A stretch of DNA of 63,994 nucleotides, the filler included, from Octopus bimaculoides (Eukaryota), in NCBI RefSeq assembly GCF_001194135.2. It is 8 parts of 8 records of this genome, joined end to end, with 100 filler letters (N's around TTAATTAATTAA, not from the genome) between each part and the next. Parts side by side here need not be neighbours in the genome. Positions count along the whole stretch, not along the records: positions 32,622 to 52,752 come from NC_068981.1; 7 more parts are not named here. One strand, 5' to 3'. The translations under genes and the position numbers were made by a program. Below are positions 33,760 through 52,497 of this stretch, piece by piece. A model generated the notes under the pieces. It was not told the DNA's origin. It did not search any database and saw only the letters and a program-made list of their open reading frames with translations. Positions within the stretch are counted from its first letter, which is position 1. Each line of letters begins with the position of its first letter.

Positions 33760-35171
33760 TATAGAAATGTTTTGAAATTTTTGTCCGAATCATAATTAGA
33801 AAAAAAAAAAAAATTCTTAAAAAAAATTTTTCCCGCATATTTTGAANNNNNNNNNNNNNNNNNNNNNNNNNNNNNNNNNNNNNNNNNNNNNNNNNNNNNN
33901 NNNNNNNNNNNNNNNNNNNNNNNNNNNNNNNNNNNNNNNNNNNNNNNNNNNNNNNNNNNNNNNNNNNNNNNNNNNNNNNNNNNNNNNNNNNNNNNNNNNN
34001 NNNNNNNNNNNNNNNNNNNNNNNNNNNNNNNNNNNNNNNNNNNNNNNNNNNNNNNNNNNNNNNNNNNNNNNNNNNNNNNNNNNNNNNNNNNNNNNNNNNN
34101 NNNNNNNNNNNNNNNNNNNNNNNNNNNNNNNNNNNNNNAAAAAAAAAACATGGCTTCCGTGACGTCAACACACATACATGAACGCCATGGCATGCCAACA
34201 CAAACACATGCCCGCTATCTGTGACATATACACACACATAGTCTTTGTATTCACTTAGGAAAAAAAACGTCAACTTCTTGGTGTATACAATATTGTCATC
34301 ATTTTGTAATATTTTTTAACTGAATGTGATTTCAAAAATGTAAGTTGCTTGTACAATAAGTATTTATATTTTAGCTTTCTTTAAACAGACAATATTTTAA
34401 TGTTTTTTAAAATTATTTTTACGTCGTTAATAACCATAAATTTTTTTAAAATTTACTTTTCTTTTAAAATGAAAGAGAGGAGAAACTGAAAGATGTATGT
34501 ATGTATATATGAAATGGACGTGTGTGTGTGTGAGAGAGAGAAAATAAAGTGAATGAAGGGGCGTGTTGTCATGTATACGTACATACATCAATACATATGC
34601 ATACATCTTTTTTGTATGTACATAGGCATGTGTATGTGTGAGTGAACGTGTGTTCTCATGTATGTGTAAGTGGCTCTCTCTCTCACACTCACACAGGTCC
34701 ATTTTATGTACACGTTCATACATCTCCTCTCTTTCACTTTAAAACAAAAACAAATAAATAAAATTTATGGAAATTAATGAACAAAACCAGCTGATGTGGA
34801 TGACAGTTCTGAGAGTCACAGCGAAAAATCGCCCCAAGGGAATACCATTACAAAAATTTTCTCGAGTGCATTCAACATTTCTCAGTGCCAAAAATTTGGC
34901 TGCTATCACATAACAGCTAATTGCAATAAAGGACCCGAAATACCTGTTATGTGGTAGGAGGGCGTACAAGAAACAGCAGCCAAATATTTCTTTTCTGGGG
35001 AAAGGAGCCGTTTACGTATGATTTTGATGTCACATTCATTGAAAGCATGCAAAATAACAAGGAAAAGAGAAAAACTCAAAAAAACAAAACTCCGTTTCTT
35101 GGAAACCCAGACTTTCCAGGTGATCCAATGGGTCAGAGGTAGTCTGGTGTGTATACACATACACACATATG

Positions 35172-36480: not shown

Positions 36481-37748
36481 TATGCATGTGTGTGAGCATG
36501 TGCATGCACATCTATGCAGACATATGCACACTCGCATGAAGCCATACACATGTAGCATGTACACTAGGGATACAACTTTTCAATTTTTTTCCTCAAACAC
36601 AATTTCCTGTATCATATTTAGATGAGCTTTTCTGCGTAAGTAACGGAAGTGAACTCACTTTTGAGCTATCTTTCAAAAAGTTCACCCATGAATCTACGTT
36701 TGTATTCTTATGCGAAACTTGTTTGAACATGGGCAAGGTTGCATAGCGGTCTTGGCTTTCAATAAATTCTTAGCATTTATAAGACTTCCTTCACAAAGCA
36801 AATAAGTTCTTCTTTCCCTGTCAGCCTTGTTGTTTCGCTTTCAGTGTGAATCCTGCATGACTGGTGGCAGTATGTCATTCAAGAAAGGTTTCAAAGTTGT
36901 TGAGAAGAACAAAGAGAAACGGAGAAGAAATTTGGTGCGGTTCCAGTCCCATTCAGCTAGAGGTGATGTGCCTGTAGAAGAAGCCTCACTGGCCAGCAGA
37001 AGTCGAATGCCACTCAAGGAGAAGGTTGTTGGTCGATACCAGTTTCTTTGGAAATCAATTAAAAGGCAGAAAGGAGAGAGTGGCAAAATTATCAAGAGAG
37101 GTGACAGTAGTGTGGAGAGATTAATTGAAATTTCCAATCATTTCCAAGCTCGAAAATGTGCTTCATTTGTATGACAAATGTGCCAAGAAAGGAAACTTTG
37201 AGCCACAGTTTATCTGCATTTTGTATCTCTGACTGTCACCTCCTCCTACTGTGTTTGTTCTTTTAGTCTCCCTCTGCCAGTGTGATCAGTTTGAAACCCA
37301 TAGCATTTCATTATATGTAAGATTTTCGAAAAGAAAACGAACAGAACAACTAAGCAGAGATATTACAGGAATGAAGTAGAAATGCTCTTGGATAATTTGG
37401 AAAACTTCAAACTGTTTCATGAAGCGATATGAGACAAATAAAAAAAAAAATAACAGAACAACTTTAGCTTGTGCCAAATGGTTTAGAAAATAAATTGTAT
37501 AAGTTGCAACAAATTCAACAGCTTCTAATGCTAAAGTGTTACTCACAAAAAAAAAAAATATATATACACACACACACACAGATATACACATACACACATG
37601 TACATACATACATATACATACACATGTACACACATACATACACACACACACAAAGATGTAGCATATATATATTATTATATTTTAATTCTCTCAAAAACAG
37701 CAGAAATATCTCTCTTTAAAACAACATGAAAGAAAATTATTTACAAAT

Positions 37749-37912
37749 TTAACATTTCTTTTTCTTCTTTTCAGGAGAACCATCTTCTCTGTTGGTATTT
37801 TCATTGCTTAGAGACACATCAACCTGAAAATGAAGAGATGAGGCCACTGAAGAAGCCCACAATGCCAATTCAACTTGGTGAGCAGACCATTTGGTTTGGA
37901 TGGTTTTAGAAT
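37749..37912 (-). CDS. Amun: Terminal exon 5 of Amun-like gene (D-SKTIQTKWSAHQVELALWASS...GSPEKKKKKC*)
   Basis: Acceptor gtctttttatttcag|AT (phase 1), 164 nt to TAA; W-x-x-H-x-VELALW motif; basic C-terminal tract resembling an NLS. Confidence 0.92.
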
Positions 37913-38419
37913 CTGAAATAAAAGACACAAACGACATCAAAATACATAATTGTGAAAAAGTAAACAATACACATAGGAGATATCATAGCCCCATACCCAC
38001 AGTTTACACAGGTAGAGTAGAATAGTTAGTGGCCTGTTATGGAGATAGATGTATGTGTGGGTGGGTGGGTGTATGCATATACATGTATATGCACATGTAT
38101 GTAAGCATATAGATATGAAAGAAAACAGATCAACATACACACGGATAGGTACATAGGTTATATGAACAGAAAAGCACACATACGCAAATGAAAACTGAAA
38201 CACATGACCATATACACACACACACACACACTTTACTTCACACAAGGACACATGGAGACACATCCACACATATGGAGATGTACATCCATACATACAAACA
38301 GGGTACATAGTTGCAAAACACACACACTCAGACATGCACACACAAGGAGACAGAGGTACAAACACGCAAGCACACACACACACACACACAAACACGGACA
38401 CGCAAACACATGAATATGC

Positions 38420-40047
38420 AGAGTGCCGCTGAACTGGCTCCCATGCAGGTGGCACATAAAAAACACCATTTTGAGCATGGTCGTTGCCAGTACTGTGTGA
38501 CTGGCATGTAAAAGCACCCATTACACTCTTGGAGTGGTTGGCGTTAGGAAGGCCATCCAGCTGTAGAAACTCTGTCAAATCAGATTGGAGCCTGGGGCAG
38601 CCTTCTGGCTTGCCAGTCCTCAGCCAAATCGTCCAACCCATGCTAGCATGGAAAGCAAACGTTATATGATGAGGATGATGATGAAATGTACACACACACA
38701 TACATACATATATACTTATGCACACAAACACACACTCATGCATACATACATCAAAGACATGGTTAATAGTGAAGCATAATCTTTGAACATTGGGCTCACA
38801 GAGGTAATGACTGGTGACCAAGTCCTTTAGTGATGTGCTGTGCTTGAGAGGACCTGTCGAGTCAAGTGCACCCATGCTGGTGGCACGTAAAGAACATCTT
38901 TTGAATGTTGGGCCTCATGGAGGCAAAGTGGCTGAGTTCCTGTCAAGCGTTGGGCCTCGTGGAGGCAAAATGGCTGAGTTCCTTTTGAGTGCTGGGCCTC
39001 ATGGAGGCAATGACCAAGATCTTTGGCATTATGTCGTGCTTGAGAAGACCCATCAAGCCGAGCAAAATCACAGTCGTGACAGATACTGGTGTCACACAAA
39101 TGGCATTCATGCTGGTGGCATGTAAAAGCACCCAGTACACTCTCAGAGTGGTTGGCATTAGGAAAGGCATTCAGCCATAGAAAACCATGGCAAATTAAAC
39201 TGGAGCCTGGTGCAGCCTTCCAGTATGCCAGCCCTGGTCAAATCGTCCAACCCATGCCAGCATGGACAACGACTGTTAAATGATGATAATGATGATGATG
39301 ATTATGAAATTATTGTTTTCCATTTACAAGTATGAGAAAGATGGCAGCATCTTCAGAAAACACTTTTATTAAGAACAGCTAGGATGCTTAGGAAAATTCT
39401 TGGCATCTAAGGGTTACTTCCTGTAACCCAATGTGAGGAATTTTCCTTTACCAATAGTTTAATCCGTTGTGCGTAAATGAAATAATAATAATGGTTTCAA
39501 ATTTTGGCACAAGGCCAGCAAATTTTTTTTTGGGGGGGGTAAGTCAATTGTTTGAGCTCTAGTGCCCAGCTGGTCCTTATTTTCTCGACTGCCAAAGAAT
39601 GAAAGGCAAAGGCGGAATCTGAACTCAGAATGTAAAGACCAACAAACTGCTGCTAACCATTTTCCCCAATCATGCTAACGATCCTACCAGCTTGCTGCCT
39701 TATGAAATAATAATAATAATAATAATAATAATAATCATCATTTTAATTGAACGTCCGCTTCCCAAGCTGGCATGGGTTGGACGGTTTGACTGGGGTCTGG
39801 GAAGCCAGAAGGCTGCACCAGGCTCCAGTCTGATCTGGCAGAGTTTCTACAGCTGGATGCCCTTCCTAACGCCAACCATTCTGAGAGTGTAGTGGGTGCT
39901 TTTATGTGCCACTGGCACAAGGGTTAGTCAGGCGGTTCTGGCAACGACCACGCTCAAAGGTATTTTTACGTGCTACCTGCACAGGAACCAGTCTAGCGGC
40001 ACTGGCAATGACCACGCTCAAATATTGTTTGTCACGTGCCAGTACGG

Positions 40048-40099
<52 letters not shown>

Positions 40100-40585
40100 T
40101 AATGATGATGATGATGATGATGTCTGCATGGTGTCAGACATGAAAATTGAGTTTTTCACTCTGGGACACAAAATCTATTTTGAAGGGAAATACCTTTGGT
40201 CAGTGTCGTTGACCACCACATAAAACAGAGTAACTTTAAGGGAAAGTTTGTTTTGTAAAATCAATTAGTCTAACGAGGAAGCCTTCCTAATTAAAAGTAC
40301 ACAATTACTGCCACCTGACTAGCTCCCTGTGCCGGTAGCACGTAAAAATCATCATCTGAACGTGGTCGATGCCAGCCCCCTTGCTCTGTCTGGCTCCTGT
40401 GCCAGTGGCACGTAAAAAGCACCCACTACACTCTCAGAGTGGTTGGCGTTAGGAAGGGCATCCAGCTGTAGAAACACTGCCAGATCAGATTGGAGCCTGG
40501 CGTAGCCATCTGGTTTCATCAATCCCCAGTTAAACCATCCAACCCATGCCAGCATGGAAACCGGATGTTAAGCGATGATGATGCT
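38420..40585. mobile_element. Cluster of RTE 3'-end copies in intron 4: 38420-38685(+), 38760-39305(+), 39735-40045(-), 40305-40585(+)
   Basis: Same 3'-UTR consensus and (GAT)n/(CAT)n tails in both orientations. Confidence 0.85.
38900..39010 (+). repeat. Three tandem units of about 42 bp
   Basis: (t/c)gttgggcctc(a/g)tggaggcaaa(g/a)tggctgagttcct, repeated, with a partial third unit. Confidence 0.85.
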
Positions 40586-40652
40586 AAGACAGAAGAATGT
40601 TAATGAGGAACTGCATACATGTTAACGAGAGACCGTATTCACATTATGATCA

Positions 40653-40687
<35 letters not shown>

Positions 40688-40835
40688 AGACAGCCTACAC
40701 ACCAATATAAGATTGCTATTTTGAGATTATTGGTGTCTTTGACTGCAAAAATATTCCACATTATTATTTGGTACAAAACAATTTGGCCAAAAAGAAATCA
40801 TTTAATAATTTTATTTATGAATAAATAACAATATA

Positions 40836-41010
40836 GGCGAAGAAGTGGCTGTGTGGTAAGTAGCTTCCTTACGAACCACATGGTTCCGGGTTCATTCCCA
40901 CTGCGTGGCACCTTGGGCAAGTGTCTTCTACTATAGCTTCGGGATGACCAAAGCCTTGTGAGTGGATTTGGTAGACGGAAACTGAAAGAAGCCAGTCGTG
41001 TATATGTGTG

Positions 41011-41075
<65 letters not shown>

Positions 41076-41270
41076 ATGTGTTTGTCCCCCCAACATTGCT
41101 TGACAACCGATGCTGGTGTGTTTGCGTCCCCGTAACTTAGCGGTTCAGCAAAAGAGGCCGATAGAATAAGTACTAGGCTTACAAAGAATAAGTCCTGGGG
41201 TCGATTTGCTCAACTAAAGGCGGTGCTCCAGCATGGCCACAGTCAAATGACTGAAACAAGTAAAAGAGTA
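40836..41270 (+). mobile_element. Full-length tRNA-headed SINE with an internal (TA)n/(TG)n microsatellite (family A/C)
   Basis: A-box-like gtggctgtgtggtaag, B-box-like ggttcattccc, central microsatellite, tail ...gactgaaacaagtaaaagag; full or partial copies at about 271, 7130-7570(-), 8700(-), 9430(-), 11810, 12985, 13550, 14945-15400, 19345, 20850(-), 23270, 26040, 47870(-), 55365(-). Confidence 0.9.
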
Positions 41271-41359
41271 ATTATAATAATAATAATGATGATAAACTGA
41301 CTGCCTAAAGTAAATAGTTGTCTTAGAAACCAAAAACGAATAAATAAGAATATATTTAC

Positions 41360-41515
41360 CAGATTTTGCAAACATTTTCCTGATATTGCTAACAGCGTTC
41401 ATGTAATCCGTAAAGTAAGGAATTGTATACATCTTGGGTCTGTTTGGCAGAGCATAAATCATGCTCTCATCAGCCATAAATGGAACCTTTTCAGGAAGAA
41501 CAGCTGCCAAAATTG
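41360..41515 (-). CDS. Amun: Exon 4 of Amun-like gene (A-ILAAVLPEKVPFMADESMIYALPNRPKMYTIPYFTDYMNAVSNIRKMFAKS)
   Basis: Strong T-rich acceptor ttttgcttgtttttaag|CA, donor TCTG|gtaaat, 156 nt (phase 1 to 1); PFMADE motif. Confidence 0.95.
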
Positions 41516-43084
41516 CTTAAAAACAAGCAAAACAAAAAAAAAAAGGCTTAAAATTTTTTTTTTTAAAAACCAGCAATAATTTAACAGCAAATTCTTAACA
41601 ATTTCCATTATTTATCAAAAAGAAAAAGAGTTCTTTATAATTGGTTCTATGTGAAAATCAAATTGTCATCATCATTAATGTTGTCATCATTGCTATCGAT
41701 GTCGTCATCATCATCATCATCATCATTTAACATCTACATTTCCATGATTGCTTGGGTTGGAAAGAATACAGTGAGACAGGTTTTCTGTGGAAGGGTGCTC
41801 TTCCTGTCAGTTACCCTCACCTTTTTCCAAACAAGCTAATATTTCCCTCATGACCACATGTATTTCCATGGGAGATTGGGAACAAAGGACACCGCTTGTA
41901 TGACAGTGATTCTCATTTACAATCATTGCATGGTGTCAAGACAAGCACACATACACACATATACATGTGTGGACACACACATACACTTGCAAACATACAC
42001 ACATGTATATATACACATATACATGCATGCATACACACACACATAACGCCCCCCCACATGCTTCTTTTACTCTCTGGCCACCAATTCCATTTGTAAGGCT
42101 TATGACCTAAGGCTACAGAAGGAGACACTTGCCCAAGGTGCCACACAGCAGAACTGAACCTGAAACCATGTGGTGAGTAAGCAAACCTGCAACTATTGAG
42201 AAATGGGTGCGAAAAATAATCTACCACTGGAAACAATTCTTGTTAGTAGCCATTCATGTGAAATAGCAGCTATTTTCAGCAAGATTAATGAAGTCAAACA
42301 ATGAGCAATATTATGTTAAAGATAGAAAATTCAATCTTTTTGTGAGTAACAATTAAAACATAATCCAACAATTTGTTGTTCACCTGAGCCCTGGATACAA
42401 TAAAGAAGAAATTTGGTTTCCCAAACAAGTTCATAAAGATGATACATCAATTTCGTGATAGCAAGATTATGTTGTGAATAATGGAGAATTCTTGACACAT
42501 TTCACTGTAAGCAATGCTGTGAAGCAGCCACACTCTTCACTTCAATGTTTAGGACAATGCTTCGTGATGCAGTCTCGCATGAGACATCTGGCATCCAGAT
42601 CAGGCACAGATTTGATGGGGGTCATCCTCTGCAAGTTGCAGAGAGATTCAGTTTATTAAAGACATACCAAAAAGCTTTACCACTTCCACCTAACATGCTT
42701 ACAAAACGTTCTTAACATCAGGTGGCATGATAAAACTCTCAACTGTGCTCTGGAGAGCTAATCCGTCAAACATGTTCGATGATGATCAGTCATGCGTTGG
42801 TCGTTGCCAGTGCCACCTGACTGGCTCCCAGTGCTGGTGGCACGTAAAAAACACCATCCAAATGTGGTCGATGCCAGCCCGGCTGCTGTGCCGGTGGCAC
42901 ATAAAAAGCACCCACGACACTCTCGGAGTGGTTGGTGTTAGGAAGGGCATCCAGCTGTAGAAACCATTCCAGATCAGATTGGAGCCTGGTACAGCCTCCT
43001 GGCTTGCCAGACCCTAATCAAACCATCTAACCCATACCAGCATGGAAAACGAACAATAAACGATGATGATGATGATGATGTATG

Positions 43085-43545
43085 CTTTCCTGAGCAAATT
43101 CCAGCTGCAGTAGCATGGATATGTTGTGTGCAAGATTGATTTTAAGCTCTCCAAGTAAATCTTCTTTGGTGAACAAACAGTTGGCTTTCGGTGATGTTGT
43201 GGACCAACAAAGAAATACAAAGACACGTTCAACGCAACCTTGAAAAAAGTGCAGCTTAGACCAGTCTATTTGGGAGCATCTTGCTCAGGATTGCTCAATG
43301 TGGCAAAGGGTTGTGTACTCTGGAGTACAGTACTGTGAATGTGATATGACTAGAGAAGCTAAAGAGGGAAGGGCAGCAGGAAAAGCAAGAGTCCCACCGG
43401 GTCCTGATTCGGTTGTTATGTGCCTCTATTGTAATCAGGGATTCCATGCCAAAATTGGCCCAAAAAGTCACCTCAGAACCCAGAAAGTGCGAAGCTAATA
43501 ACTCAGTCATCTTCAGAGACATGAGGAACAACCCGAATAATACAA
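43085..43545 (+). mobile_element. RTE-BovB-like LINE 3' fragment with terminal C2H2-like finger
   Basis: Remnants of KKYKDT...TLKK, WEHLAQD..WQRVVYSGV, then CLYCNQGFHAKIGPKSHLRT, followed by a gtcatcttc...gaacaa-type tail. Confidence 0.75.
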
Positions 43546-44231
43546 CTCTAGCAACATCATTTGTGGTTCCCCAGTTAACTTCCTTCACAGTTGTGGCTTG
43601 TGTCTACAGACAACAATTTGATAAAAATTAAACCAATCACTTTGATTCCAATATTTTTTTGGCAATTTCTTTCCTTGTTATAATTCCCTATTTTCTCTTC
43701 AAATATCTGCAGTTATATAATCAGTTTTAAACCATTACAAATGGTATATCTTCAGGTCTAATAGCAGTGATTAGGGTAGCAGACCAGCATTACCAGATAC
43801 TCAATCACTTCACAGATACAAAACAGAAGAAAAAGATTGTCATTCATTAGAATAACATTTGTATTTATGGAATGGTGCTGTTGTAGTTTACACAGACACA
43901 CAGACATCTTATGAGATGACTTGCAAATACAAAGTTTGGTACTGATTAACTCAGTAATCAGTTATTTCAGTTTTCTAATGATCCAATTTTGATGCTGGTT
44001 AAAAGAACATGGCCCACAACCGTATCATATCTTTTTCTGTTGAACATTCCTGTTGTATATTCCAACTGACCACTTTTCCATCTTTGGCATTGTTTATGGA
44101 AACAAAATTGAAACAAATCCTGACACCAAGGATTATCTAAATATCATCAATTGCTCAATGGCACCACAAATACATTAAATCTGAACAATTTTTAGCAAAG
44201 GTTTAAGATCGAAAGACGAGAATAACACTTC

Positions 44232-44475
44232 ATTGGTCCATAATTATTGCGGCTTTTCATCAATAAATTTTATTCAACAAAAACAATAACAATTAACAAA
44301 AACTTTAAATGATTATTCTGACCGTCTGCCAAGCAAATGGGAAGCAGTAATTGAAGCAGATGCTGAATATGCTCCGGAATAATCATTTAAAAATGTTTTT
44401 GTTAAATGTTGTTATTGTTTTTGTTGAATAAAATTTATTGAAGAAAAGCTGCAGTAATTATGCCCCAACCCAATA
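44232..44475 (+). mobile_element. Mariner-derived MITE with transposase C-terminal remnant
   Basis: Inverted arms of about 85-95 bp; right end ...ccccaacccaata (mariner-like TIR + TA); centre encodes DRLPSKWEAVIEADAEYAPE*. Confidence 0.8.
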
Positions 44476-44739
44476 GTTTACAAGGACAAGACTTTCTTCT
44501 TTCTTCCTCATCTTCTATCATTTCTTAAATTGTTCTTTACTCTTTTGATCTAAACTCCCTCACCATTAAATCGCCCTCACTGGAACCCTTATCGCACCAA
44601 CTTTCTACAATTTTCTGCCCAATGTTGACCTAAAAATGTCCAAACATCTAAATCTCATCCATTTCATTCATTCACATTTTAGTGAAACATGTGGCTTTAA
44701 AATCTATTTGTGAAACAAATTAGTATTTAAGGAACCCAC

Positions 44740-44899
44740 CTGAGGCTGTTGCAGGTCCCACTGCTTTCAATGTTGTCAAAGTTTTCATGGCTGTAATCAC
44801 ATCTGGTAGTTGTTTGAAAGCTCTGCTACTCACACATTCCACTTGCTCAGCTTCGTTACTCTTCACCAGTTCAGTGAGGCGAGGACGGAATTTCCCACG
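44740..44899 (-). CDS. Amun: Exon 3 of Amun-like gene (RGKFRPRLTELVKSN...LPDVITAMKTLTTLKAVGPATAS)
   Basis: cag|CGT acceptor, TCAG|gtgggt donor, 160 nt (phase 0 to 1); RGKFRPRL motif and HhH-like LKAVGPATAS. Confidence 0.95.
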
Positions 44900-45310
44900 C
44901 TGTTCCATAGTTTTTTTTTTTTTAAATAAATAAATATTTATAGAAAAAGAATAGCTGACATTAGGTACCACTAGAATGCCATACAATGGAGACAAGCACA
45001 GTGTGAACATGCAAAAACATACTTTCTGCTTCATCATTTTACATCAAAATAAATATTTTCCATGGAAAATTAGATATTAAATTATATATTAAATGCAATT
45101 CTGAGAAACATCAAAAGTGGTTGTGGGATGTACTAGAAACAATAGCAATATCTCCATCAAATCACCTTTTTGTTTGAAAATATTTTCAACTTTTGTTTTT
45201 ATATACCGAAAAGGCTTCTTGCATGTCGCCTGACTGGCCCCCGTGCTGGTGGAACATGAAAAGCACCATTTTGAACATGGTCGATGCCAGTACCACCTGA
45301 CTGGCCCTCT

Positions 45311-47300
45311 AGTATGCACACTGACATTATACATCCAGCAGAGCATACTGGCTTCATCCCTTGCGAGCTTATGCATGTCCTCAGCAGTCACGGCCCATGT
45401 TTCACAGCAATGTAGCGTGGCTGTTCATACACATGCGTCATACAGTCTGCCTTTTACTCTGAGCGAGAGGCCCTTTGTCACCAGCAGAGGTAAGAGCTCA
45501 CTGAACTTTGCCCAGTCATCAGCATAGAGAAGTTCCCAGGGGCATCCTGTCTTGAATTCCTCTGTTATTGCCTCGAGGACTATGATAAATAGGAGGGGGC
45601 TGAGGACTAAACCTTGGTGGACCCCTACCTGAAATTCTTTACTATACTCGTTGCCAACCCTACACCTCACTGACAGTATCCCTGTACATGGCTTGTACAG
45701 CTCTCACTAACCACTCATCTATCCCTAGTTTCCGCATTGACCACCAGATAAAGGGTTGGGGGACCCTGTCGAAGGCTTTCTCCATGTCAACAAGAGCCAA
45801 GCACGTATTTCTCCTGCAGCTGTCTTACCAGAAATATAGCATCATTGGTGCTTTTACCTGGCACAAACCCAAACTGCATCTCATCTAAATTGATTCGCTC
45901 CCTAATTAGTTGGGCTATGACCCTCTCCGTAACTTTCATAACCTGATCTAACAGCTTGATGCCTCTGTAATTATTTGTATCTAAAGCGTCACCTTTACCT
46001 TTGTAGCAGTTGAATATGATGCTGCTACACCAGTCATTGGGTATGACTCCTTCGTGTATCACCTGGTTCGTAATACGGGTGACTAGGCTATAGCCGACAC
46101 TGCCAGATATTTTGAGCATCTCAGCAGTGATTCTTGATGGGCCGGGGGCTTTTCCTGTCTTCACACCCTTAATTGCTTCATCCACCAAGGGACTGTCAAT
46201 TTAGATAGCTGATCCCTCTGTTGGGTCAACATTTGGCAGACTCTCTTTCTCCCATTCGTTCTCATCATTTAGCAATGCTTCTTAGTGGCATCTCCAAGTC
46301 TCTCTCTTTGCAGCTTTGTTTAGTGTAAGTGAGCCATCATCCATGCAAACACATTTCTGTCCTATGACATCACAATTCTGTCTTGCAACACAAAACACCT
46401 CAAGTCTTTGGTCCTCACGATGCAGAACATTGGCAATTTTTTTCTTATCTGCTTCCCCTTTGGCTAAATAAACCTGTCTCCTAGCTTCCCTTCTGGCAGT
46501 CTGATACAATTCCCTGCTACCACCGTTCTTCCAGTCCTTCCAAGTCTGTTTCTTTTCTCTAATTGCCCTGTCGACAATATTGTTCCACCACCACATTGCC
46601 TTAGGTAGAGAGGGGACTTTGCACCATCCACAGATCTGGTCAGTAGCCCTCAACAGGTTGTCCTGTAGAAACCTCCGGTTGTCTTCCACATCATGTGATG
46701 CTATATCCTCCTCTATTTTGTCAAAGGCTTCGAGTAATACGTCTCTAAATCTCTGTCCATTTACAGGATCCTTAAGCTTCCAGCCCTTTCTTTTCCATGC
46801 TGGTCATTTTCTGGGCATCCATTTAGCCCTGATCTTGAAATTGCTAACTACTAATCTATGTTGTGGGTGTATTCTTCACCTGGGAACGTTTTGGCATTTA
46901 TAAATAGCCATCTTTCCTGTTTCCTGGCGAGGATGTAGTCACTCTGACTAGTGTGTCCACCCGACCGGTAGGCGAATAGGTCACTGGCAGGTTTCCTGAA
47001 GTTAGTATTACAACCATAAGGTCATTTGCATCACAGAACTCCAGCAGCTGTGTTCCCTCCTCACAGCAGGAACAGAAAAACCATAGCCACCATGTATGCC
47101 ATGGAAGCCCCTGGACGTTGTCCAACATGCCCATTGAAGTCGCCAGCCACAAAGAGAAGGTCCCTTTCATTCGTCGATGAGGTGGTCTGCAGGAGGGAGT
47201 CATAAAATTGGTCTTTCTGTCCATCGGGTAGCCCAGGCTGAGGGGCATAGGCCGAGATAATGGTTGCTAGCCCATGGTGAAGGACTAATCTGATCTTAAG
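45311..47300 (-). mobile_element. RTE-clade LINE ORF2 relic (APE endonuclease + RT) in intron 2, same orientation as the host gene
   Basis: ISAYAPQ, VAGDFNGHVG (APE); KAPGP, NYRGIKLLDQVMKV, QFGFVPGKST, QGxVLSPLLFI, LLYADD (RT); stops and frameshifts. Confidence 0.92.
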
Positions 47301-47421
47301 TATTCTATCATATATATATATAAAAACATAATTAAAGGATGAAATCATTAAAATTAATTTTATCAGTGGCCAGCATATACAAAAATAACCTTTTAGGTAA
47401 AATTCATATATATATCTATAT

Positions 47422-47618
47422 ATATATAATTGTATACAATATAATTATGATTAACGACACAGAAGCAACCATGCCTATATGCTGAAAATAGATGCCAAAT
47501 CCGTCCAGCCACTGAAAATCTTCACTTTACAATATACATAGGTGTATTTTCAGCATATAGGTATAATTGCTTCTGTGTCGTTAATTATAATTATATTCTA
47601 TACAATTACATATATATA
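47422..47618. mobile_element. MITE-like inverted repeat (arms about 70 bp, 54 bp spacer) in a TA run
   Basis: attaacgacacagaagcaa...cctatatgctgaaaata versus tattttcagcatatagg...ttgcttctgtgtcgttaat. Confidence 0.8.
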
Positions 47619-48276
47619 AAGGAGCAGTACAAAATGTGGATACAGAGAATCGTGCAGCTATCACAGAAAGTTCTTCTTACAGATTTGGCTATCAGTGCAC
47701 ATGGTAACCAACTACAAAGAAGTGCAATGTACAGTGTCCATGTAACTGAATACAATTGTATTGTATAATGCTGTGCATACATATTAATGGAAACATGTAT
47801 GCATAATTTCTTCCATACTGAAATTAATGCTACATGAAGAAGGCTGTGAAGCAGTTGTAATGCTATGGAAGTTTCTGTCAGTCAAATTCATTGACAAATT
47901 TTCAATGCTTTGACCAGTTTGAAGCTAGAGTGGAAGACACTTGTCCCAAGGTACTGTGCAGTAGGACTGAACCTGGAACCATGTGGTTGAAAAGTGAATT
48001 TCTTAATCACACAGTAATACACACACACACACGTTAGATTTTGTTTAACCCAAAGTCAAGTTTGATCACTCAAACCTATGATCAAAGACATTCTATATAT
48101 GGCCATCCCATTTTAATGTGTGTAGAACTACATTAACCAGTGTGTCTTCTTCATATAGTAGAGTGTGATACGAAGAGGAATGTTTTGGCTGTTACTTCTA
48201 GCAAGTGAAGTTAGGGTGTAGAGGCTCTCTAATTGGCTCATAAAAACAATTTTTTAAAATCCATGTAATTTCTTAC

Positions 48277-48370
48277 GGTTAATTTCCATTGCATCAATTT
48301 ACACAGTTCATCATGTTTTATACATTTGGTCTGTCTTTCATTAATGGCAGCAGGCAGCTTGTTTTGGTAC
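48277..48370 (-). CDS. Amun: Exon 2 of Amun-like gene (YQNKLPAAINERQTKCIKHDELCKLMQWKLT)
   Basis: Acceptor ctctttcttattctag|G, donor ACC|gtaaga, 94 nt (phase 2 to phase 0); ELxKLMxWKL motif. Confidence 0.93.
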
Positions 48371-48481
48371 CTAGAATAAGAAAGAGGGTTATAAATGGGA
48401 AAGAGTAAGAAAAAGAGGGAGAGAGTGGGAGGGAATAGAGAGTTACTACCTTTGTCGAAGTTATTTCTAATATATATATAT

Positions 48482-49340
48482 ACCGCCTGACTGGCCTTGT
48501 AGGGTTTTCGAGCGAGATCGTTGCCGGTGCCCCCGGACTGGCTCTTGTGCGGGTGGCACATAAAAGACACCATTTCGAGCGTGGCCGTTTTCGTGCGGGT
48601 GACACGTAAAAGCACCCACTACACTCTCTGAGTGGTTAGCGTTAGGAAGGGCATCCAGCTGNNNNNNNNNNTTTTCGTGCGGGTGACACGTAAAAGCACC
48701 CACTACACTCTCTGAGTGGTTAGCGTTAGGAAGGGCATCCAGCTGTAGAAACTCTGCCAAATTAGATTGGAGCCTGGTGTTGCCATCCGGTTTCACCAGT
48801 CCTCAGTCAAATCGTCCAGCCCATGCTAGCATGGAAGGCGGACGTTAAACGATGATGATGATGTATATATATATATCATGCTCATCATCATCATCGTTTA
48901 ACGTCTGCTTTCCATGCTAGCATGGGTTGGACGATTTGACTGAGGACTGGTGAAACCCGAAGGCTACACCAGGCTCCAATCTGATCTGGCAGAGTTTCTA
49001 CAGCTGGATGCCCTTCCTAATGCCAACCACTCCGAGAGTGTAGTAGGTGCTTTTATGTGCCACCGGTACGAAGGCCAGTCAGGCGGTACTGGCAACGGCC
49101 ACGCTCAAAATAGTGTATTTTATGTGCCACCCGCACAAGAGCCAGTCCAGGGGCACTGGCAACAATCTCGCTTGAAAGTCCTTACACATGCCATGGGCAC
49201 AAGTGCCAGAAAGGCGACGCTGAGCACAGGTGCCATCATGATTTCACTTTTGCTTGCCCCAACAGGTCTTCGCAAGCCGAGTTTCATGTCCAATGAAGGA
49301 GACGATGTTGGCATGGGTGCCAGTCGTCGAATTTAGTTCG
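48482..49340. mobile_element. Tail-to-tail inverted pair of RTE 3'-UTR copies (48482-48864 +, 48880-49340 -)
   Basis: ...gacgttaaacgatgatgatgatg-[TA-rich spacer]-catcatcatcatcgtttaacgtc...; the arms are reverse complements. Confidence 0.9.
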
Positions 49341-49646
49341 ATAATATGTAGTTAAATTAAATTAATTTTAATTAATTTAATCTCTACCATGCTTTCTTAC
49401 ATGTTAGGGTTACCATTTGAAACGATCAAACGCATGGATCAAAATCTTATAAAACTTTTAGCATCTTCTCTTCTCCATCTTTAATTGTCTGTTGAGTTTA
49501 TATAGGATCCGTGTTCTATAAATGCTCATAACACACCTTATACTTGTAATATATCTTAAATAAATACTTACAATATTAATATGAAGAATCTTTATTAGAA
49601 ATCTAACTTTGGACCCCACAAAGTAAAAATGTTCTAATTGAACTCA

Positions 49647-49697
<51 letters not shown>

Positions 49698-50159
49698 ATC
49701 ATCATCATCATATATATATATGAGGGAGGCTGAATATCATGACTCTATCTATGTAGTCATGATATTCATCCTCTCTCACCAATAAACTCTTGCACTCTCT
49801 GCTCACTCAAACTTCCAGTTCTGTTTCCATTCATTTACTTTGCTTCTTTCTAGCAACTACTGCTCACCCTTATATTATGTGGGATAGCTATATATCTTCT
49901 CTGTATCAAGACATTTGTACATGTTCCACTATCCTGTTTTAGTCCCTCAACACTTACCATAAAACCTAAAGAAAGCCTACAACTTTTTCTTTTGGTTTAG
50001 ATGTTGAGTATGATTTGAGGGAAACTTGGCTGCTATTCATAGCATGTCGAGTAATGACAGTGCAAGGTGGCTTATGTGACATGGGGCCAGCTTGGTCTAC
50101 TCCTGCCTCTTCCCTGTATAGATGTCCAGTTCCTCTAAAACAAATGGGAAGCCATCCAG

Positions 50160-50680
50160 TGCAGCAAGATCTTCGATGGGCTAGAGCACTGTCTTGACCA
50201 GCAGGTTTCTGCTTGACCTCCTACCTCCCAAGATGGTATTATGGCTCAATGCAGTGCCATCACTCTCGACTGTTTACGGATTGGGGTTTCCTTGACCATT
50301 GGCCTCCAGATCTGTTAGCCTCACAAATGTCGCTGTGGATTCTCTCAGCCTCCATCCATTGTCGTGCCATTATAATGCTGGCTGGCTGCCCTCCACACCA
50401 TGCTGCCCTCAATGAGATCATAAAGCATGGTCTATACGCTGCAGGGTTCGCTTCCCAGCTCGGGCCAGGGAGGCTGGACAGGTAGGTCCCCTCATCTGGG
50501 ATGCCACATGCTGCTCATCACGCCAAGAAGGGCAGCAGTTGGGAACACTGGTATTCTTGGTCTCTGGATTACATCCCTTTTCACTACTACCAGGGCTGCG
50601 ATGGCTATCTGCAAATGCAAGCCCTGTGTGTCGCCTTTTCCATTTGTTCGTCGAGATCATGAGGCGGACTAACAAGTCTT
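50160..50680 (+). mobile_element. CRE-like (RLE-type) non-LTR retrotransposon relic in intron 1
   Basis: LWLNAVP, LRIGVSL, HHAALNEIIKHGLYAAGFASQLGPGRLDR, LIWDAT remnants matching the zinc-knuckle/RLE region of CRE-type elements. Confidence 0.65.
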
Positions 50681-50860
50681 TTTTTTAGTATTAGCTGTAG
50701 TATTCCTTAAGAGCACACATCTTTTTACAACTATTTTGCATAGTTGAGGAGAGATGGGCGAATTAACAAGGTTTAGAGAAGAGGGGTGTTGGGAGGACAA
50801 AACAATATTTGAGACAAGAAATAGGATGTTTTATGTATAAAATACAGCAACAAAAGATTT

Positions 50861-50966
50861 ATTAATTGGCGGAGGTAAAGAGTACGTACACCACCCGTTT
50901 TCGACGTAACAAAAACCCTAAACCTAAACACCAGGTGTACGTATTCTTTACTTTCGTCTATTAATT
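50861..50966. repeat. Small hairpin/MITE (arms about 32 bp) with a telomere-like spacer
   Basis: gtaaagagtacgtacacc / ggtgtacgtattctttac; spacer contains aaccctaaacctaa. Confidence 0.7.
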
Positions 50967-51761
50967 ATCGGTTTAGTCAAGATAATATAGTTATATTAGT
51001 TAACGAGCAGCTGAGACGAAGGTAGGGTTACAAAATATTATGGATGTATTCAGTTTGTATCCATTATGATTGGTCAATAATTTTGTGTTTCGCCCTTGAT
51101 ATAAAAAGATCGCCGTTCTATTTTTGTTTCACTTCTCACTTTCTGTAATGCCGTCTTGTAAACAATAGTTGTCATAATTCAGCGGAAAACATTGCTTGTT
51201 TACGAAAGTAAAAGCGCTTAAGGTGAGATCAAATATTTATTGCGAAATAAAATGATTAATAAAAATCATTAGGGCACACATTAGACCTTCACAAGGCTGA
51301 AGGTGTTCCACCAAAATAAAGAATCCAACATAGAGGTCCTCTTCGGACGAGCATTGAAAGTTTCGGTTAATGTTTATGAAAATCACCCCCACCACCGCCC
51401 AAATACTGGAATGAGTTTCGGTTAATGGACCACATCGGAGGAGAAAAGTCCTGATTAAACTCAAAGGAAGAAGAACCAGGCAAGATATTCATTCGATGAC
51501 CTTAGCAGGTGTTTTTTTTTTAAATAATGGCCGAGGAAAAAATGGAGGGAAAATAATGTAATTAAGGTGATTGATTAAAGATAATTGCTTCATTAAATTA
51601 ATCGTTATCTATGAAAAGATGCAGTTAATTTTTTTTTAATATTTCTTATCTTTATTTTGTAGATACGGTAAAACAAATATTTCAAAATGATTAACAGAAA
51701 AATGAAATTTTTTAATAATCCTTCACTACACTCACTTGTAATGTGTGTGTGTGTGTGTGTA

Positions 51762-51900
51762 CAGTAATCCCTCGATTATCGCGGGTCCAAAACCCCCAAC
51801 GAAAGGTGAAAATCCGCGAATTAGAAACAGTACTGGACTGTATATTTTTAAAATTATTTTTATAATTTGTATATATGGGCGGAAGTCTTTCCTATATTTA
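51762..51900 (+). mobile_element. Tigger/pogo-like transposon end
   Basis: ta|CAGTAATCCCTCGATTATCGCGG terminus; partner TIR not found. Confidence 0.5.
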
Positions 51901-52369
51901 TTTTATTGTAAATGCAAAACGACACCACGGAAGAATCGGCGTAAGCTTAAATAACAAACCGATTGGCTAAGACCAACGCCTAATATCTTCTACAATTTAA
52001 TAAATATAACTTTGTTAATCTTATCAAAAAAAAAAGAAAAGAAAGATTTTATCTCTATTATTGTAATCTCCAGCTACGAAAACATTAAAATTTCGTGAGA
52101 AATGAATTTTTCAAGAGGAATAAAGTCACCAAACTGCAAAAGACAAGTTCACTCATCAATCAGTTAACGATACAAGCATTAATTGAATAGACACGTGCTT
52201 TTGCCCCTTTTTTGACAGGCTTTACTGTAATATCGGGACGTACAAAATAAGTTGCAATTTGCAATAATTCAGTGAAAAGGAGGAAGATATTTTATGTAGT
52301 CATTAGAAAAGTTGCCCAAGTTTTGTATAAAGTTTAGTATAAAAACGTGGAAAAGATAATGTAACAAAC

Positions 52370-52497
52370 CAGTCATCCAATTCAATTAGAATCTTCTTTT
52401 TTTCTTTGTTAAGTGTGTCTGCTTTGGCTTTGAGAATGTTTGAGTAATTAAGGAAACACTGTTGTAGGTGTTGGAGATCAATATTTAACGAAGCCAT
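52370..52497 (-). CDS. Amun: Exon 1 of Amun/CG2446/zgc:112496-like HhH-fold protein (MASLNIDLQHLQQCFLNYSNILKAKADTLNKEKKKILIELDD-W)
   Basis: ATG at 52497 in context gcggctgaaATGG; 128 nt ending TG|gtttgt (phase 2); completes the Trp codon with the first G of exon 2, giving the family-like ELDDWYQ segment. Confidence 0.88.

What the first reader, a model, noticed from the sequence alone, without database searches (positions are those of the whole stretch)
37749..52497. Intact 233-aa orphan HhH glycosylase-like gene (Amun/zgc:112496 family) hidden in five short exons
Seen: five exons join with GT-AG ends and matching phases (2,0,1,1) into a 702 nt stop-free CDS. Motifs are LMQWKLTRGKFRPRL, an HhH-like LTTLKAVGPATASAIL, PFMADE, WSAHQVELALW and a terminal SPEKKKKKC. 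Knowledge: HhH-GPD glycosylases use an HhH hairpin followed by a catalytic Asp, and bifunctional ones also have a Lys in the hairpin. Drosophila Amun was described as a nuclear protein with a putative glycosylase domain and, as far as I recall, no known substrate. Inference: the Asp of PFMADE may be the catalytic-position residue, while the Lys position holds Ala (GPATA). That would fit a monofunctional glycosylase or a damage/modified-base reader of unknown substrate. This is the best candidate for uncharacterised biology in the window.
Basis: partly seen in the sequence, partly recalled or inferred. Interest (0 to 1): 0.7.

Follow-up and report, generated by a model that had tools for sequence, protein, structure and literature searches.

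The report
Octopus Amun-family glycosylase-like gene
This is a real, intact and already annotated five-exon octopus gene for a small nuclear-type protein of the Amun/zgc:112496 family, which looks like a distant relative of DNA-repair glycosylases but has never been tested biochemically.

Summary
Five minus-strand exons with GT-AG introns (phases 2,0,1,1) join into a 702-nt CDS of 233 aa. This protein is 100% identical to NCBI's "uncharacterized protein LOC106872751" of Octopus bimaculoides, so the gene is neither hidden nor an orphan. The N gap lies in intron 1. It is flanked by an exact 74-nt duplicate and does not touch the CDS. Argonauta hians has the same exon structure, and core dN/dS is about 0.12.

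The family is large: 3,514 clusters at 50% identity. It covers animals (fish zgc:112496, tick and mite "Amun", a Drosophila 558-aa form), protists, and, as found here, Gemmatimonadota, Chloroflexota and Rhodothermales bacteria.

Glycosylase landmarks are present:
- a helix-hairpin-helix;
- an acidic residue (Asp143) 21 residues after the hairpin Gly, as in hOGG1 (20 in the bacterial members, as in EndoIII);
- an invariant Ala where bifunctional enzymes have Lys;
- an F-R-x-R loop in register with the hOGG1 Y203/R204/R206 wedge.

Fold support is consistent in kind but weak. Foldseek's top hits are archaeal Ogg, OGG1, MutY and MagIII, with E≥0.1 and TM 0.40–0.44. Pfam HhH-GPD does not match, and the OGG-like model PF21790 is hit only below threshold.

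Most likely it is a monofunctional DNA glycosylase. A non-catalytic base reader is the main rival. Activity is untested.

The parts
52370..52497 (-). Exon 1, coding part (aa 1-43 first two bases); ATG at 52497-52495; donor GT at 52369-52368, phase 2
   Evidence: identical to NCBI protein; same 128-nt exon in Argonauta
48277..48370 (-). Exon 2 (aa 43-74), ends with the invariant W71-K72-L73 (codons W71-K72 at 48283-48288); phase 0 donor
44740..44899 (-). Exon 3 (aa 75-128 first base). Holds the R75-G76-K-F78-R79-P80-R81-L82 loop (44876-44899), N89, and the helix-hairpin-helix LKAVGPATAS (G122 at 44756-44758; A124, the Lys position of bifunctional enzymes, at 44750-44752)
41360..41515 (-). Exon 4 (aa 128-180 first base). 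Holds the second HhH helix, the Pro-rich loop LPEKVPFMA, and the acidic pair D143 (41469-41471) and E144 (41466-41468)
37749..37912 (-). Exon 5, coding part (aa 180-233 plus TAA at 37749-37751). Holds the W188...E194..L197-W198 helix, then the low-confidence basic tail (aa 207-233, 37752-37832) ending KKKKKC
   Evidence: pLDDT 58-66 in the tail; tail dN/dS about 0.94 against core 0.12
48588..48745 (.). Assembly gap (N at 48662-48671) with its two exact 74-nt duplicate flanks, inside a SINE-like repeat in intron 1; not part of the CDS
37681..37686 (-). ATTAAA, a possible polyadenylation signal 63 nt after the stop codon (consensus match only)
   Evidence: no transcript data available

Best explanation
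The locus is the intact Octopus bimaculoides orthologue of Drosophila Amun (CG2446) and zebrafish zgc:112496. It encodes an all-helical domain of about 206 aa plus a disordered lysine-rich tail that probably targets the nucleus.

The domain is a very divergent, OGG-like branch of the helix-hairpin-helix/Gly-Pro-Asp (HhH-GPD) DNA glycosylase superfamily. It most likely works as follows. The HhH (aa 108-133) clamps the DNA backbone. The invariant loop R75-G-K-F78-R79-P-R81 acts as the wedge and orphan-base contact. A target base is flipped into a pocket. Asp143, the first residue of the helix that follows the Pro-rich loop, supports hydrolysis of the N-glycosidic bond.

The hairpin Lys of bifunctional enzymes is an invariant Ala here, so the protein should be monofunctional: it would leave an AP site and have no lyase activity. 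The substrate is unknown.

Shown: gene structure, identity with the annotation, family membership, conservation pattern, motif register, predicted fold class.
Inferred: base flipping, catalysis by Asp143, nuclear targeting.
For: Gene and family:
- CDS and splice sites.
- 100% identity to LOC106872751.
- Conserved exon structure in Argonauta and purifying selection, with core dN/dS 0.12.
- 472 homologues in the first search, named zgc:112496, Amun or CG2446.
- 3,514 clusters at 50% identity with E<=1e-3.

Glycosylase-like features:
- Pfam HHH/HHH_5 is hit in 25-26 of 40 members, reaching 25.3 bits against a cut-off of 24 in one member.
- NCBIfam mutY aligns aa 110-141 to profile positions 104-135 (E 0.024).
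- hhalign places GPATA on EndoIII GRKTA and on hOGG1 GTKVA.
- The hairpin Gly to Asp spacing is 21 in animals, as in hOGG1 G247-D268. It is 20 in the 32 bacterial members, as in EndoIII G118-D138.
- The best ungapped register with hOGG1 199-279 aligns F78/R79/R81/G122/A124/D143 with Y203/R204/R206/G247/K249/D268. Only 54 of 2,000 shuffles reach its score.
- Position 143 is acidic in 50 of 50 animal members (49 D, 1 E). E144, W71, K72, R75, G76, G122, P123 and A124 are each 50 of 50.
- D137 is invariant in the 32 bacterial members.

Structure:
- The AF2 model has pLDDT 91.4 and pTM 0.86, with 11 helices and D143 at a helix N-terminus.
- Foldseek top hits for two independent models are MjOgg (prob 0.99), SsOgg, OGG1, MutY, MagIII and MIG.
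- 22 of 32 bacterial members hit Pfam PF21790 'OGG-like' at up to 24.7 bits.
- UniRef labels two members 'HhH-GPD domain-containing protein'.

Cellular role: Amun is described as nuclear with a glycosylase domain (bioRxiv 10.1101/2025.04.04.647281) and co-purifies with Rad50 (PMC13076223).
Against: - No Foldseek hit reaches E<=0.001. TM is only 0.40-0.44 and rmsd 9-12 A.
- Pfam PF00730 (HhH-GPD) never matches, and PF21790 stays below its cut-off.
- HMMER against PDB sequences finds only generic HhH proteins.
- hhalign against single EndoIII and OGG1 sequences aligns only the hairpin, at 13% probability.
- The ungapped register with hOGG1 is only modestly significant, at about 0.03.
- The residue after the Asp is Glu-Ser rather than the usual His, Thr or Arg context.
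- Drosophila genetics describes Amun as a transcriptional regulator, not a repair enzyme.
- No activity has been reported for any member.
- The position of Asp143 in a cleft could not be inspected.
Confidence: 0.5

Rival explanations
1. It is a non-catalytic reader. The glycosylase-like fold flips or senses a damaged or modified base, or an AP site, without cutting. It then recruits other factors (transcription or repair complexes). This would explain Amun's role as a Notch/Achaete regulator.
For: A PF21790-like 'inactivated EndoIII' domain serves as a sensor of hypermodified bases in END nucleases (bioRxiv 10.1101/2025.03.31.646159). This family's closest Pfam model is that same PF21790. The catalytic Lys is absent in all members. 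Amun is described as a nuclear transcriptional regulator and as a Rad50 interactor.
Against: Unlike the END domain, this family keeps the acidic residue at the catalytic position in 50 of 50 animal and 32 of 32 bacterial members. Bacterial members are free-standing 190-200-aa genes with no fused or conserved partner to signal to.
Confidence: 0.3
2. It is a general HhH DNA-binding or scaffold protein that does not recognise bases. The resemblance to glycosylases would be limited to the common hairpin motif.
For: The only hits above or near threshold are generic HHH and HHH_5. PDB sequence searches return ComEA, uS13 and RecR hairpins. The fold match is weak.
Against: Conservation extends far beyond the hairpin: WK..RGKFRP, N89, D143-E144, Y157, W188 and W198 are conserved from bacteria to animals. 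Both Foldseek lists are dominated by full-length glycosylases, not by other HhH proteins. The spacing to the Asp matches EndoIII and OGG1 exactly.
Confidence: 0.12
3. It is an enzyme of the same fold acting on something other than a DNA base, for example RNA, a nucleotide or a DNA-protein adduct.
For: There is no direct evidence. The invariant K72 and E144 have no counterpart in the canonical HhH-GPD mechanism. The fold is strongly diverged.
Against: The HhH motif and the basic nuclear-type tail point to DNA. The Rad50 association also points to DNA.
Confidence: 0.05
4. It is a pseudogene or a chance open frame.
For: None found.
Against: The intact 702-nt CDS has canonical splice sites. It is identical to an annotated protein. 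Core dN/dS is 0.12 against Argonauta, with identical exon structure.
Confidence: 0.01

Closest known systems
Drosophila Amun (CG2446) and arthropod 'protein amun'
   Same: Homologous N-terminal domain of about 220 aa. Tick and mite orthologues named Amun are 40-48% identical to molluscan and echinoderm members. The D. ficusphila 558-aa member matches the family profile at E 5.7e-68 over positions 4-215. It shares the WK.RGKF, FMADE and W...LW motifs. Reported to be nuclear.
   Different: Dipteran proteins carry a low-complexity C-terminal extension of about 330 aa. Their hairpin is altered (GVG[TI]TMAS instead of GVGPATAS; WKQ instead of WKL). The octopus protein is the short 233-aa form typical of most animals.
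Zebrafish zgc:112496 and vertebrate orthologues
   Same: Same length (225-245 aa). 40-46% identity over more than 90% of the protein. Same motifs and the same basic C-terminal tail.
   Different: None of substance. All are equally uncharacterised.
Archaeal Ogg2-type 8-oxoguanine glycosylases (M. jannaschii 3KNT, S. solfataricus 3FHG)
   Same: Best Foldseek matches for both models (prob 0.99/0.96 and 0.89/0.82). Similar size (about 205 aa), all-helical, with an HhH followed by an Asp.
   Different: TM is only 0.40-0.44 and E>=0.1. HMMER detects no sequence similarity. From my own knowledge, those enzymes use a hairpin Lys and are bifunctional, whereas this position is Ala here.
Human OGG1
   Same: One ungapped register aligns F78/R79/R81, G122 and D143 with Y203/R204/R206, G247 and D268. 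The Gly to Asp spacing of 21 is the same.
   Different: There is no N-terminal beta-sheet domain (the model is all-helical). K249 is replaced by Ala and H270 by Ser. Identity is only 17% over the 81 residues.
Pfam PF21790 (putative OGG-like), DUF6308, and the iEndoIII sensor domain of END nucleases
   Same: These are the nearest curated models. 22 of 32 bacterial members and 6 of 40 animal members hit PF21790, with co-linear alignments of 110-137 residues.
   Different: All scores are below the gathering cut-off (at most 24.7 against 27 bits). According to the preprint, the END domains lack the catalytic residues and are fused to nucleases. This family keeps the Asp and is free-standing.
Monofunctional HhH-GPD glycosylases (MutY, MagIII, MIG, AlkA)
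   Same: An Asp without the hairpin Lys. MutY, MagIII and MIG appear in the Foldseek lists. The NCBIfam mutY model aligns the hairpin-to-Asp segment.
   Different: No [4Fe-4S] cysteine loop (Cys only at 14, 59, 66, 96 and 233). No PF00730 match.

Membership tests
Amun / zgc:112496 family | Full-length sequence homology to named members | tested here: met
   E 1e-40 to 1e-56 and 40-50% identity over 80-97% of the protein to non-cephalopod members, including fish zgc:112496. Arthropod members are named Amun. A snake member is named CG2446. Profile hit to a Drosophila 558-aa protein.
Amun / zgc:112496 family | Family-invariant residues present (W43, W71-K72, R75-G76, P80, N89, G122-P123-A124, D143-E144, Y157, W188, W198) | tested here: met
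   All are present in the octopus protein. Column counts are 49-50 of 50.
HhH-GPD DNA glycosylase superfamily | Helix-hairpin-helix motif | tested here: met
   The octopus protein alone is sub-threshold (PF00633, 12.2 bits). The motif is hit in 25 of 40 orthologues, up to 25.3 bits against a cut-off of 24. hhalign aligns it to the EndoIII and OGG1 hairpins. AF2 gives helix 108-115, hairpin, helix 123-133.
HhH-GPD DNA glycosylase superfamily | Gly/Pro-rich loop followed by a conserved Asp about 20 residues after the hairpin Gly | tested here: met
   G122 to D143 is 21 residues, as in hOGG1 G247 to D268. In the bacterial members G117 to D137 is 20, as in E. coli EndoIII G118 to D138. The loop is LPEKVPF. 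The position is acidic in 50 of 50 animal members and Asp in 32 of 32 bacterial members.
HhH-GPD DNA glycosylase superfamily | Match to the curated domain model (Pfam PF00730) | tested here: not met
   No PF00730 hit at E<=1 in the octopus protein, in 40 orthologues or in 32 bacterial members.
HhH-GPD DNA glycosylase superfamily | Two-lobed all-helical fold superposable on solved glycosylases | tested here: inconclusive
   Glycosylases fill the top of both Foldseek lists (prob up to 0.99). The best E is 0.11, TM 0.40-0.44 and rmsd 9 A or more. No coordinates were available to inspect the cleft.
HhH-GPD DNA glycosylase superfamily | N-glycosidic bond cleavage | not testable with these tools
   No biochemical report for any member was found.
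Bifunctional glycosylase/AP lyases (EndoIII, OGG1, Ogg2) | Nucleophilic Lys two residues after the hairpin Gly | tested here: not met
   Ala124 in 50 of 50 animal members and Ala in 32 of 32 bacterial members. It is aligned to K120 and K249 by hhalign.
EndoIII/MutY subfamily | C-terminal Cys-X6-Cys-X2-Cys-X5-Cys iron-sulfur loop | tested here: not met
   Cysteines occur only at 14, 59, 66, 96 and 233.
OGG1 family | N-terminal beta-sheet (OGG_N) domain | tested here: not met
   The model is entirely helical. No PF07934 hit.
Pfam PF21790 (OGG-like) | Score at or above the gathering cut-off (27 bits) | tested here: not met
   The best score is 24.7 bits (E 2.3e-5) in bacterial members and E 0.005 in animal members. 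The octopus protein has no hit. This makes it a sister family, not a member.

The most novel reading that the evidence does not exclude
The Amun family is a previously unassayed class of animal, protist and bacterial DNA glycosylase (or base-flipping reader). Its substrate would be an enzymatically modified or regulatory base rather than ordinary damage. Base excision or recognition at specific loci would then explain Amun's effects on Notch/Achaete-dependent cell fate and its association with Rad50.
Probability: 0.12. Interest if true: 0.8.

Novelty: new member of a known kind. Interest (0 to 1): 0.4.

Why it matters
The octopus gene itself is ordinary: it is an annotated orthologue. The family behind it is more interesting. 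It has a compact domain whose key residues are conserved from Gemmatimonadota and Chloroflexota to mammals, and it shows the signature landmarks of HhH-GPD glycosylases, yet no Pfam model covers it and no substrate is known. The only functional data come from Drosophila: developmental genetics (Notch/Achaete) and a recent Rad50 co-purification. If activity were shown, it would add a DNA glycosylase or base reader to the animal repertoire and give Amun a biochemical mechanism. The bacterial homologues found here are short, free-standing proteins and offer easy material for that test.

Tried and rejected
- **Exon hidden in the N gap: rejected.** The gap is intronic, its flanks are an exact 74-nt duplicate, and there is no indel at the exon 1/2 junction.
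- **Extra or duplicated exons in the octopus locus: none**. Argonauta has a degenerate copy of exon 3 in intron 4.
- **Sequence searches of PDB** with the protein and with two family profiles: only generic HhH or chance hits.
- **hhalign of the family profile** against single E. coli EndoIII and hOGG1 sequences: only the hairpin aligns, at 13% probability. A true profile-profile search (HHpred) could not be run.
- **Bacterial gene neighbourhoods** in 33 loci: the only recurrent 'neighbours' are antisense shadow ORFs. Real neighbours vary (HTH regulator, hydrolase, methyltransferase-like, MgsA/RarA, unknowns), so there is no operon clue.
- **Defence-system and phage libraries:** PADLOC gives nothing. 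PHROGs gives only a weak hit to an unknown family, phrog_24538, in the bacterial members. BFVD gives nothing significant.
- **My own idea that the family is missing from placental mammals: rejected.** Bats, horse, cattle, hippo, manatee, beaver and shrew have it. No primate, murid or bird appears among the 120 listed hits, but the list is cut off near the scores of the eutherian hits, so their absence is not established.
- **Literature:** the Shalaby et al. 2009 Amun paper and Loza-Coll et al. 2014 are not held. What I say of them rests on citing papers and my own memory. 'zgc 112496' returns no paper.

Full report
**1. What is in the sequence.** The usable stretch of the window, 32622-52752, is about 39% G+C and rich in microsatellites and interspersed repeats. 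Reading the minus strand gives five open segments with canonical splice signals. Joining 52497-52370, 48370-48277, 44899-44740, 41515-41360 and 37912-37749 gives introns that all begin GT and end AG, with phases 2,0,1,1. The CDS is 702 nt and the protein 233 aa, ending SPEKKKKKC.

**2. Is it real?** Yes. The protein is 100% identical over its full length to NCBI 'uncharacterized protein LOC106872751 [Octopus bimaculoides]'. The gene called on chromosome record CM046601.1 spans exactly the same 14,749 nt. The Argonauta hians orthologue (70% identity) has the same five exons (128/94/160/156/173 nt) with the same phases. Nei-Gojobori dN/dS between the two is 0.12 for residues 1-206 and 0.94 for the tail. 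dS is about 1.3 and saturated, so these values are rough. No further exon-like fragments are present. So the gene is intact and constrained, but it is already annotated and not 'hidden'.

**3. The assembly gap.** The N run at 48662-48671 lies in intron 1, 292 nt upstream of exon 2. The 74 nt on each side are identical (48588-48661 = 48672-48745). This is what two overlapping contig ends joined without merging would produce, here inside a SINE-like element that recurs in both orientations through the introns. The family alignment has no insertion or deletion at the exon 1/2 junction, and W43 and Q45 are invariant. Nothing coding is missing.

**4. Family and distribution.**
- The first search found 472 relatives across animals: Trichoplax, sponges, cnidarians, molluscs, annelids, echinoderms, hemichordates, amphioxus, fishes (named zgc:112496), reptiles and a marsupial.
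- A scorpion member as query brought in chelicerate orthologues that NCBI names 'Amun'.
- A marsupial member as query brought in monotremes, several eutherians, crocodilians, amphibians, sharks, and a snake entry named 'CG2446'. CG2446 is Amun (PMC3944433).
- An exhaustive profile search counted 3,514 clusters at 50% identity with E<=1e-3, of which 492 have E<=1e-30. These include a 558-aa Drosophila ficusphila protein and 459-531-aa Anopheles proteins with the domain at the N-terminus, as well as protist sequences from a raphidophyte, a foraminiferan and Artemidia motanka.
- Unexpectedly, 34 loci in Gemmatimonadota, Chloroflexota and Rhodothermales MAGs encode 190-200-aa homologues. They are 30-39% identical over residues ~7-201 and score E 1e-39 to 1e-53 against the animal profile.
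- The family is therefore not an orphan.

**5. Conservation.**
- Among 50 animal members, W43, R55, W71, K72, L73, R75, G76, P80, L82, N89, G122, P123, A124, A126, E144, Y157, W188 and W198 are invariant. Position 143 is Asp in 49 and Glu in one.
- The bacterial set keeps W-K-M-x-R-G, N, G-V-G-P-A-T-A-S, F-F-D-E and the C-terminal W...W.
- Eukaryotic members add a basic C-terminal tail that the bacterial proteins lack. This fits nuclear targeting, which is an inference. Amun is reported to be nuclear.

**6. Relation to glycosylases: sequence.**
- Curated models do not cover the family. The octopus protein gives only a sub-threshold HHH hit (E 0.18) and a weak mutY hit across the hairpin. PF00730 never matches.
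- Three landmarks nevertheless agree with the HhH-GPD superfamily.
  - (a) The hairpin. hhalign aligns LKAVGPATAS with EndoIII LPGVGRKTAN and hOGG1 LPGVGTKVAD. This puts Ala124 on the Schiff-base lysines K120 and K249.
  - (b) The acidic residue. G122 to D143 is 21 residues, as in hOGG1 (G247 to D268). The bacterial members have 20, as in EndoIII (G118 to D138). In the model, D143 is the first residue of a helix after a Pro-rich loop.
  - (c) The upstream loop. The hOGG1 segment 199-279, recalled from memory and verified against PDB, was slid without gaps along the octopus protein. The best register by a wide margin is residues 74-154. It aligns F78, R79 and R81 with Y203, R204 and R206, the wedge and orphan-base contacts of OGG1 according to established structural work. 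Identity is 14 of 81, and 54 of 2,000 shuffles reach the score. This significance is modest.
- The bacterial members bridge to Pfam PF21790 'putative OGG-like'. 22 of 32 hit it, at best 24.7 bits against a cut-off of 27, with alignments of about 110 residues. 12 of 32 hit DUF6308. A sponge member aligns over 137 residues.

**7. Relation to glycosylases: structure.**
- AlphaFold2 with the 40-sequence alignment gives a confident all-helical model: pLDDT 91.4, pTM 0.86, 11 helices, and a low-confidence tail from residue 207.
- Foldseek against PDB finds nothing at E<=0.001. The list is nonetheless headed, almost without exception, by HhH-GPD glycosylases: M. jannaschii Ogg (E 0.11, prob 0.99, TM 0.40/0.44), S. 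solfataricus Ogg, mouse and human OGG1, and MutY.
- An independent model of the sponge orthologue (pLDDT 88) gives the same kinds of hits, plus MagIII, MIG and EndoIII, again with E>=0.2.
- I read this as the same fold class, strongly diverged. It is not proof.

**8. Mechanism and rivals.**
- The pattern of a canonical Asp retained, an invariant Ala in place of the canonical Lys, and an aromatic/arginine loop retained is that of monofunctional HhH-GPD enzymes. I consider a monofunctional glycosylase of unknown substrate most likely (about 0.5).
- The main rival (about 0.3) is a non-cutting base reader. There is a direct precedent: the PF21790-like inactivated EndoIII domain of END anti-phage nucleases senses hypermodified bases (bioRxiv 10.1101/2025.03.31.646159). 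Drosophila work also treats Amun as a transcriptional regulator of Notch-dependent fates (Shalaby et al. 2009, cited; the paper itself is not held).
The bacterial genes are also free-standing with no conserved partner, as is usual for repair glycosylases.
- A recent co-IP finds Amun with Rad50 (PMC13076223). This fits a DNA-transaction role but does not discriminate between the two.

**9. Novelty and verdict.**
- The octopus gene is a new member only in the sense of an orthologue. Its model is already in NCBI, and the 'putative glycosylase domain' of Amun was published in 2009.
  - the bacterial and protist reach of the family;
  - the exact landmark register with EndoIII and OGG1;
  - the sister relation to PF21790 and DUF6308;
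  - the negative results for the Fe-S loop, the OGG_N domain and the catalytic Lys.
- The open question, what this conserved protein does to DNA, is real and cheaply testable. I score interest at 0.4.

Noticed in passing
L001-L032, L035, L036 (bacterial MAG contigs): The supposedly animal family has free-standing 190-200-aa homologues in Gemmatimonadota, Chloroflexota and Rhodothermales. They are 30-39% identical and share the WK.RG and GVGPATAS motifs and an invariant FFD. They have no basic tail and no conserved neighbours.
   Followed up: yes
L033:6001-7162 and L034:5786-6606: Two contigs filed under bacterial MAGs ('Stappiaceae ... chromosome: 21' and 'bacterium') carry 55-58% identical matches split into exon-sized pieces. 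They look like eukaryotic sequence binned as bacterial.
   Followed up: no
window 45428-47444 (minus strand, intron 2): A decayed non-LTR retrotransposon in the same orientation as the gene. Reverse-transcriptase (RVT_1) fragments lie in three different frames at 45428-46200, with further long open stretches up to 47444 that have no Pfam hit.
   Followed up: partly
window 38420-38690, 39100-39310, 39720-40020, 40300-40590, 42810-43080, 48500-49180: A SINE-like element of about 350 nt occurs at least six times in introns 1, 3 and 4, in both orientations (75-93% identity). Two copies form a 190-nt inverted pair at 48674-48863 and 48883-49072.
   Followed up: partly
window 33847-34138: A second, larger assembly gap (292 N) lies downstream of the gene, outside the finding.
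   Followed up: no
L038:7865-7969 (Argonauta hians, intron 4): A degenerate extra copy of exon 3 (46% identity to aa 96-130, hairpin destroyed). The octopus locus has no counterpart.
   Followed up: partly
L039:144-1970 (about 8 kb upstream of the gene, outside the window piece): The divergent upstream neighbour on the octopus chromosome is a 608-aa ABCE1/RLI-like gene called as a single exon.
   Followed up: no
protein residues ~5-44 (window 52366-52485): The N-terminal helix ending ...ELDDW gives sub-threshold hits (E 0.05-0.3) to HIV gp41 chains in PDB profile searches. I take this as chance resemblance of a short helical motif.
   Followed up: partly
(family alignments): Dipteran Amun proteins alter the otherwise invariant hairpin (GPATAS to G[TI]TMAS) and WKL to WKQ. 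Cattle have Glu instead of Asp at position 143. The best-studied member may therefore not be typical of the family.
   Followed up: partly
one search hit list: Eutherian members are seen in bats, horse, cattle, hippo, manatee, beaver and shrew. No primate, murid or bird appears among the 120 listed hits. The list is cut off near the scores of the eutherian hits, so loss is not established.
   Followed up: partly
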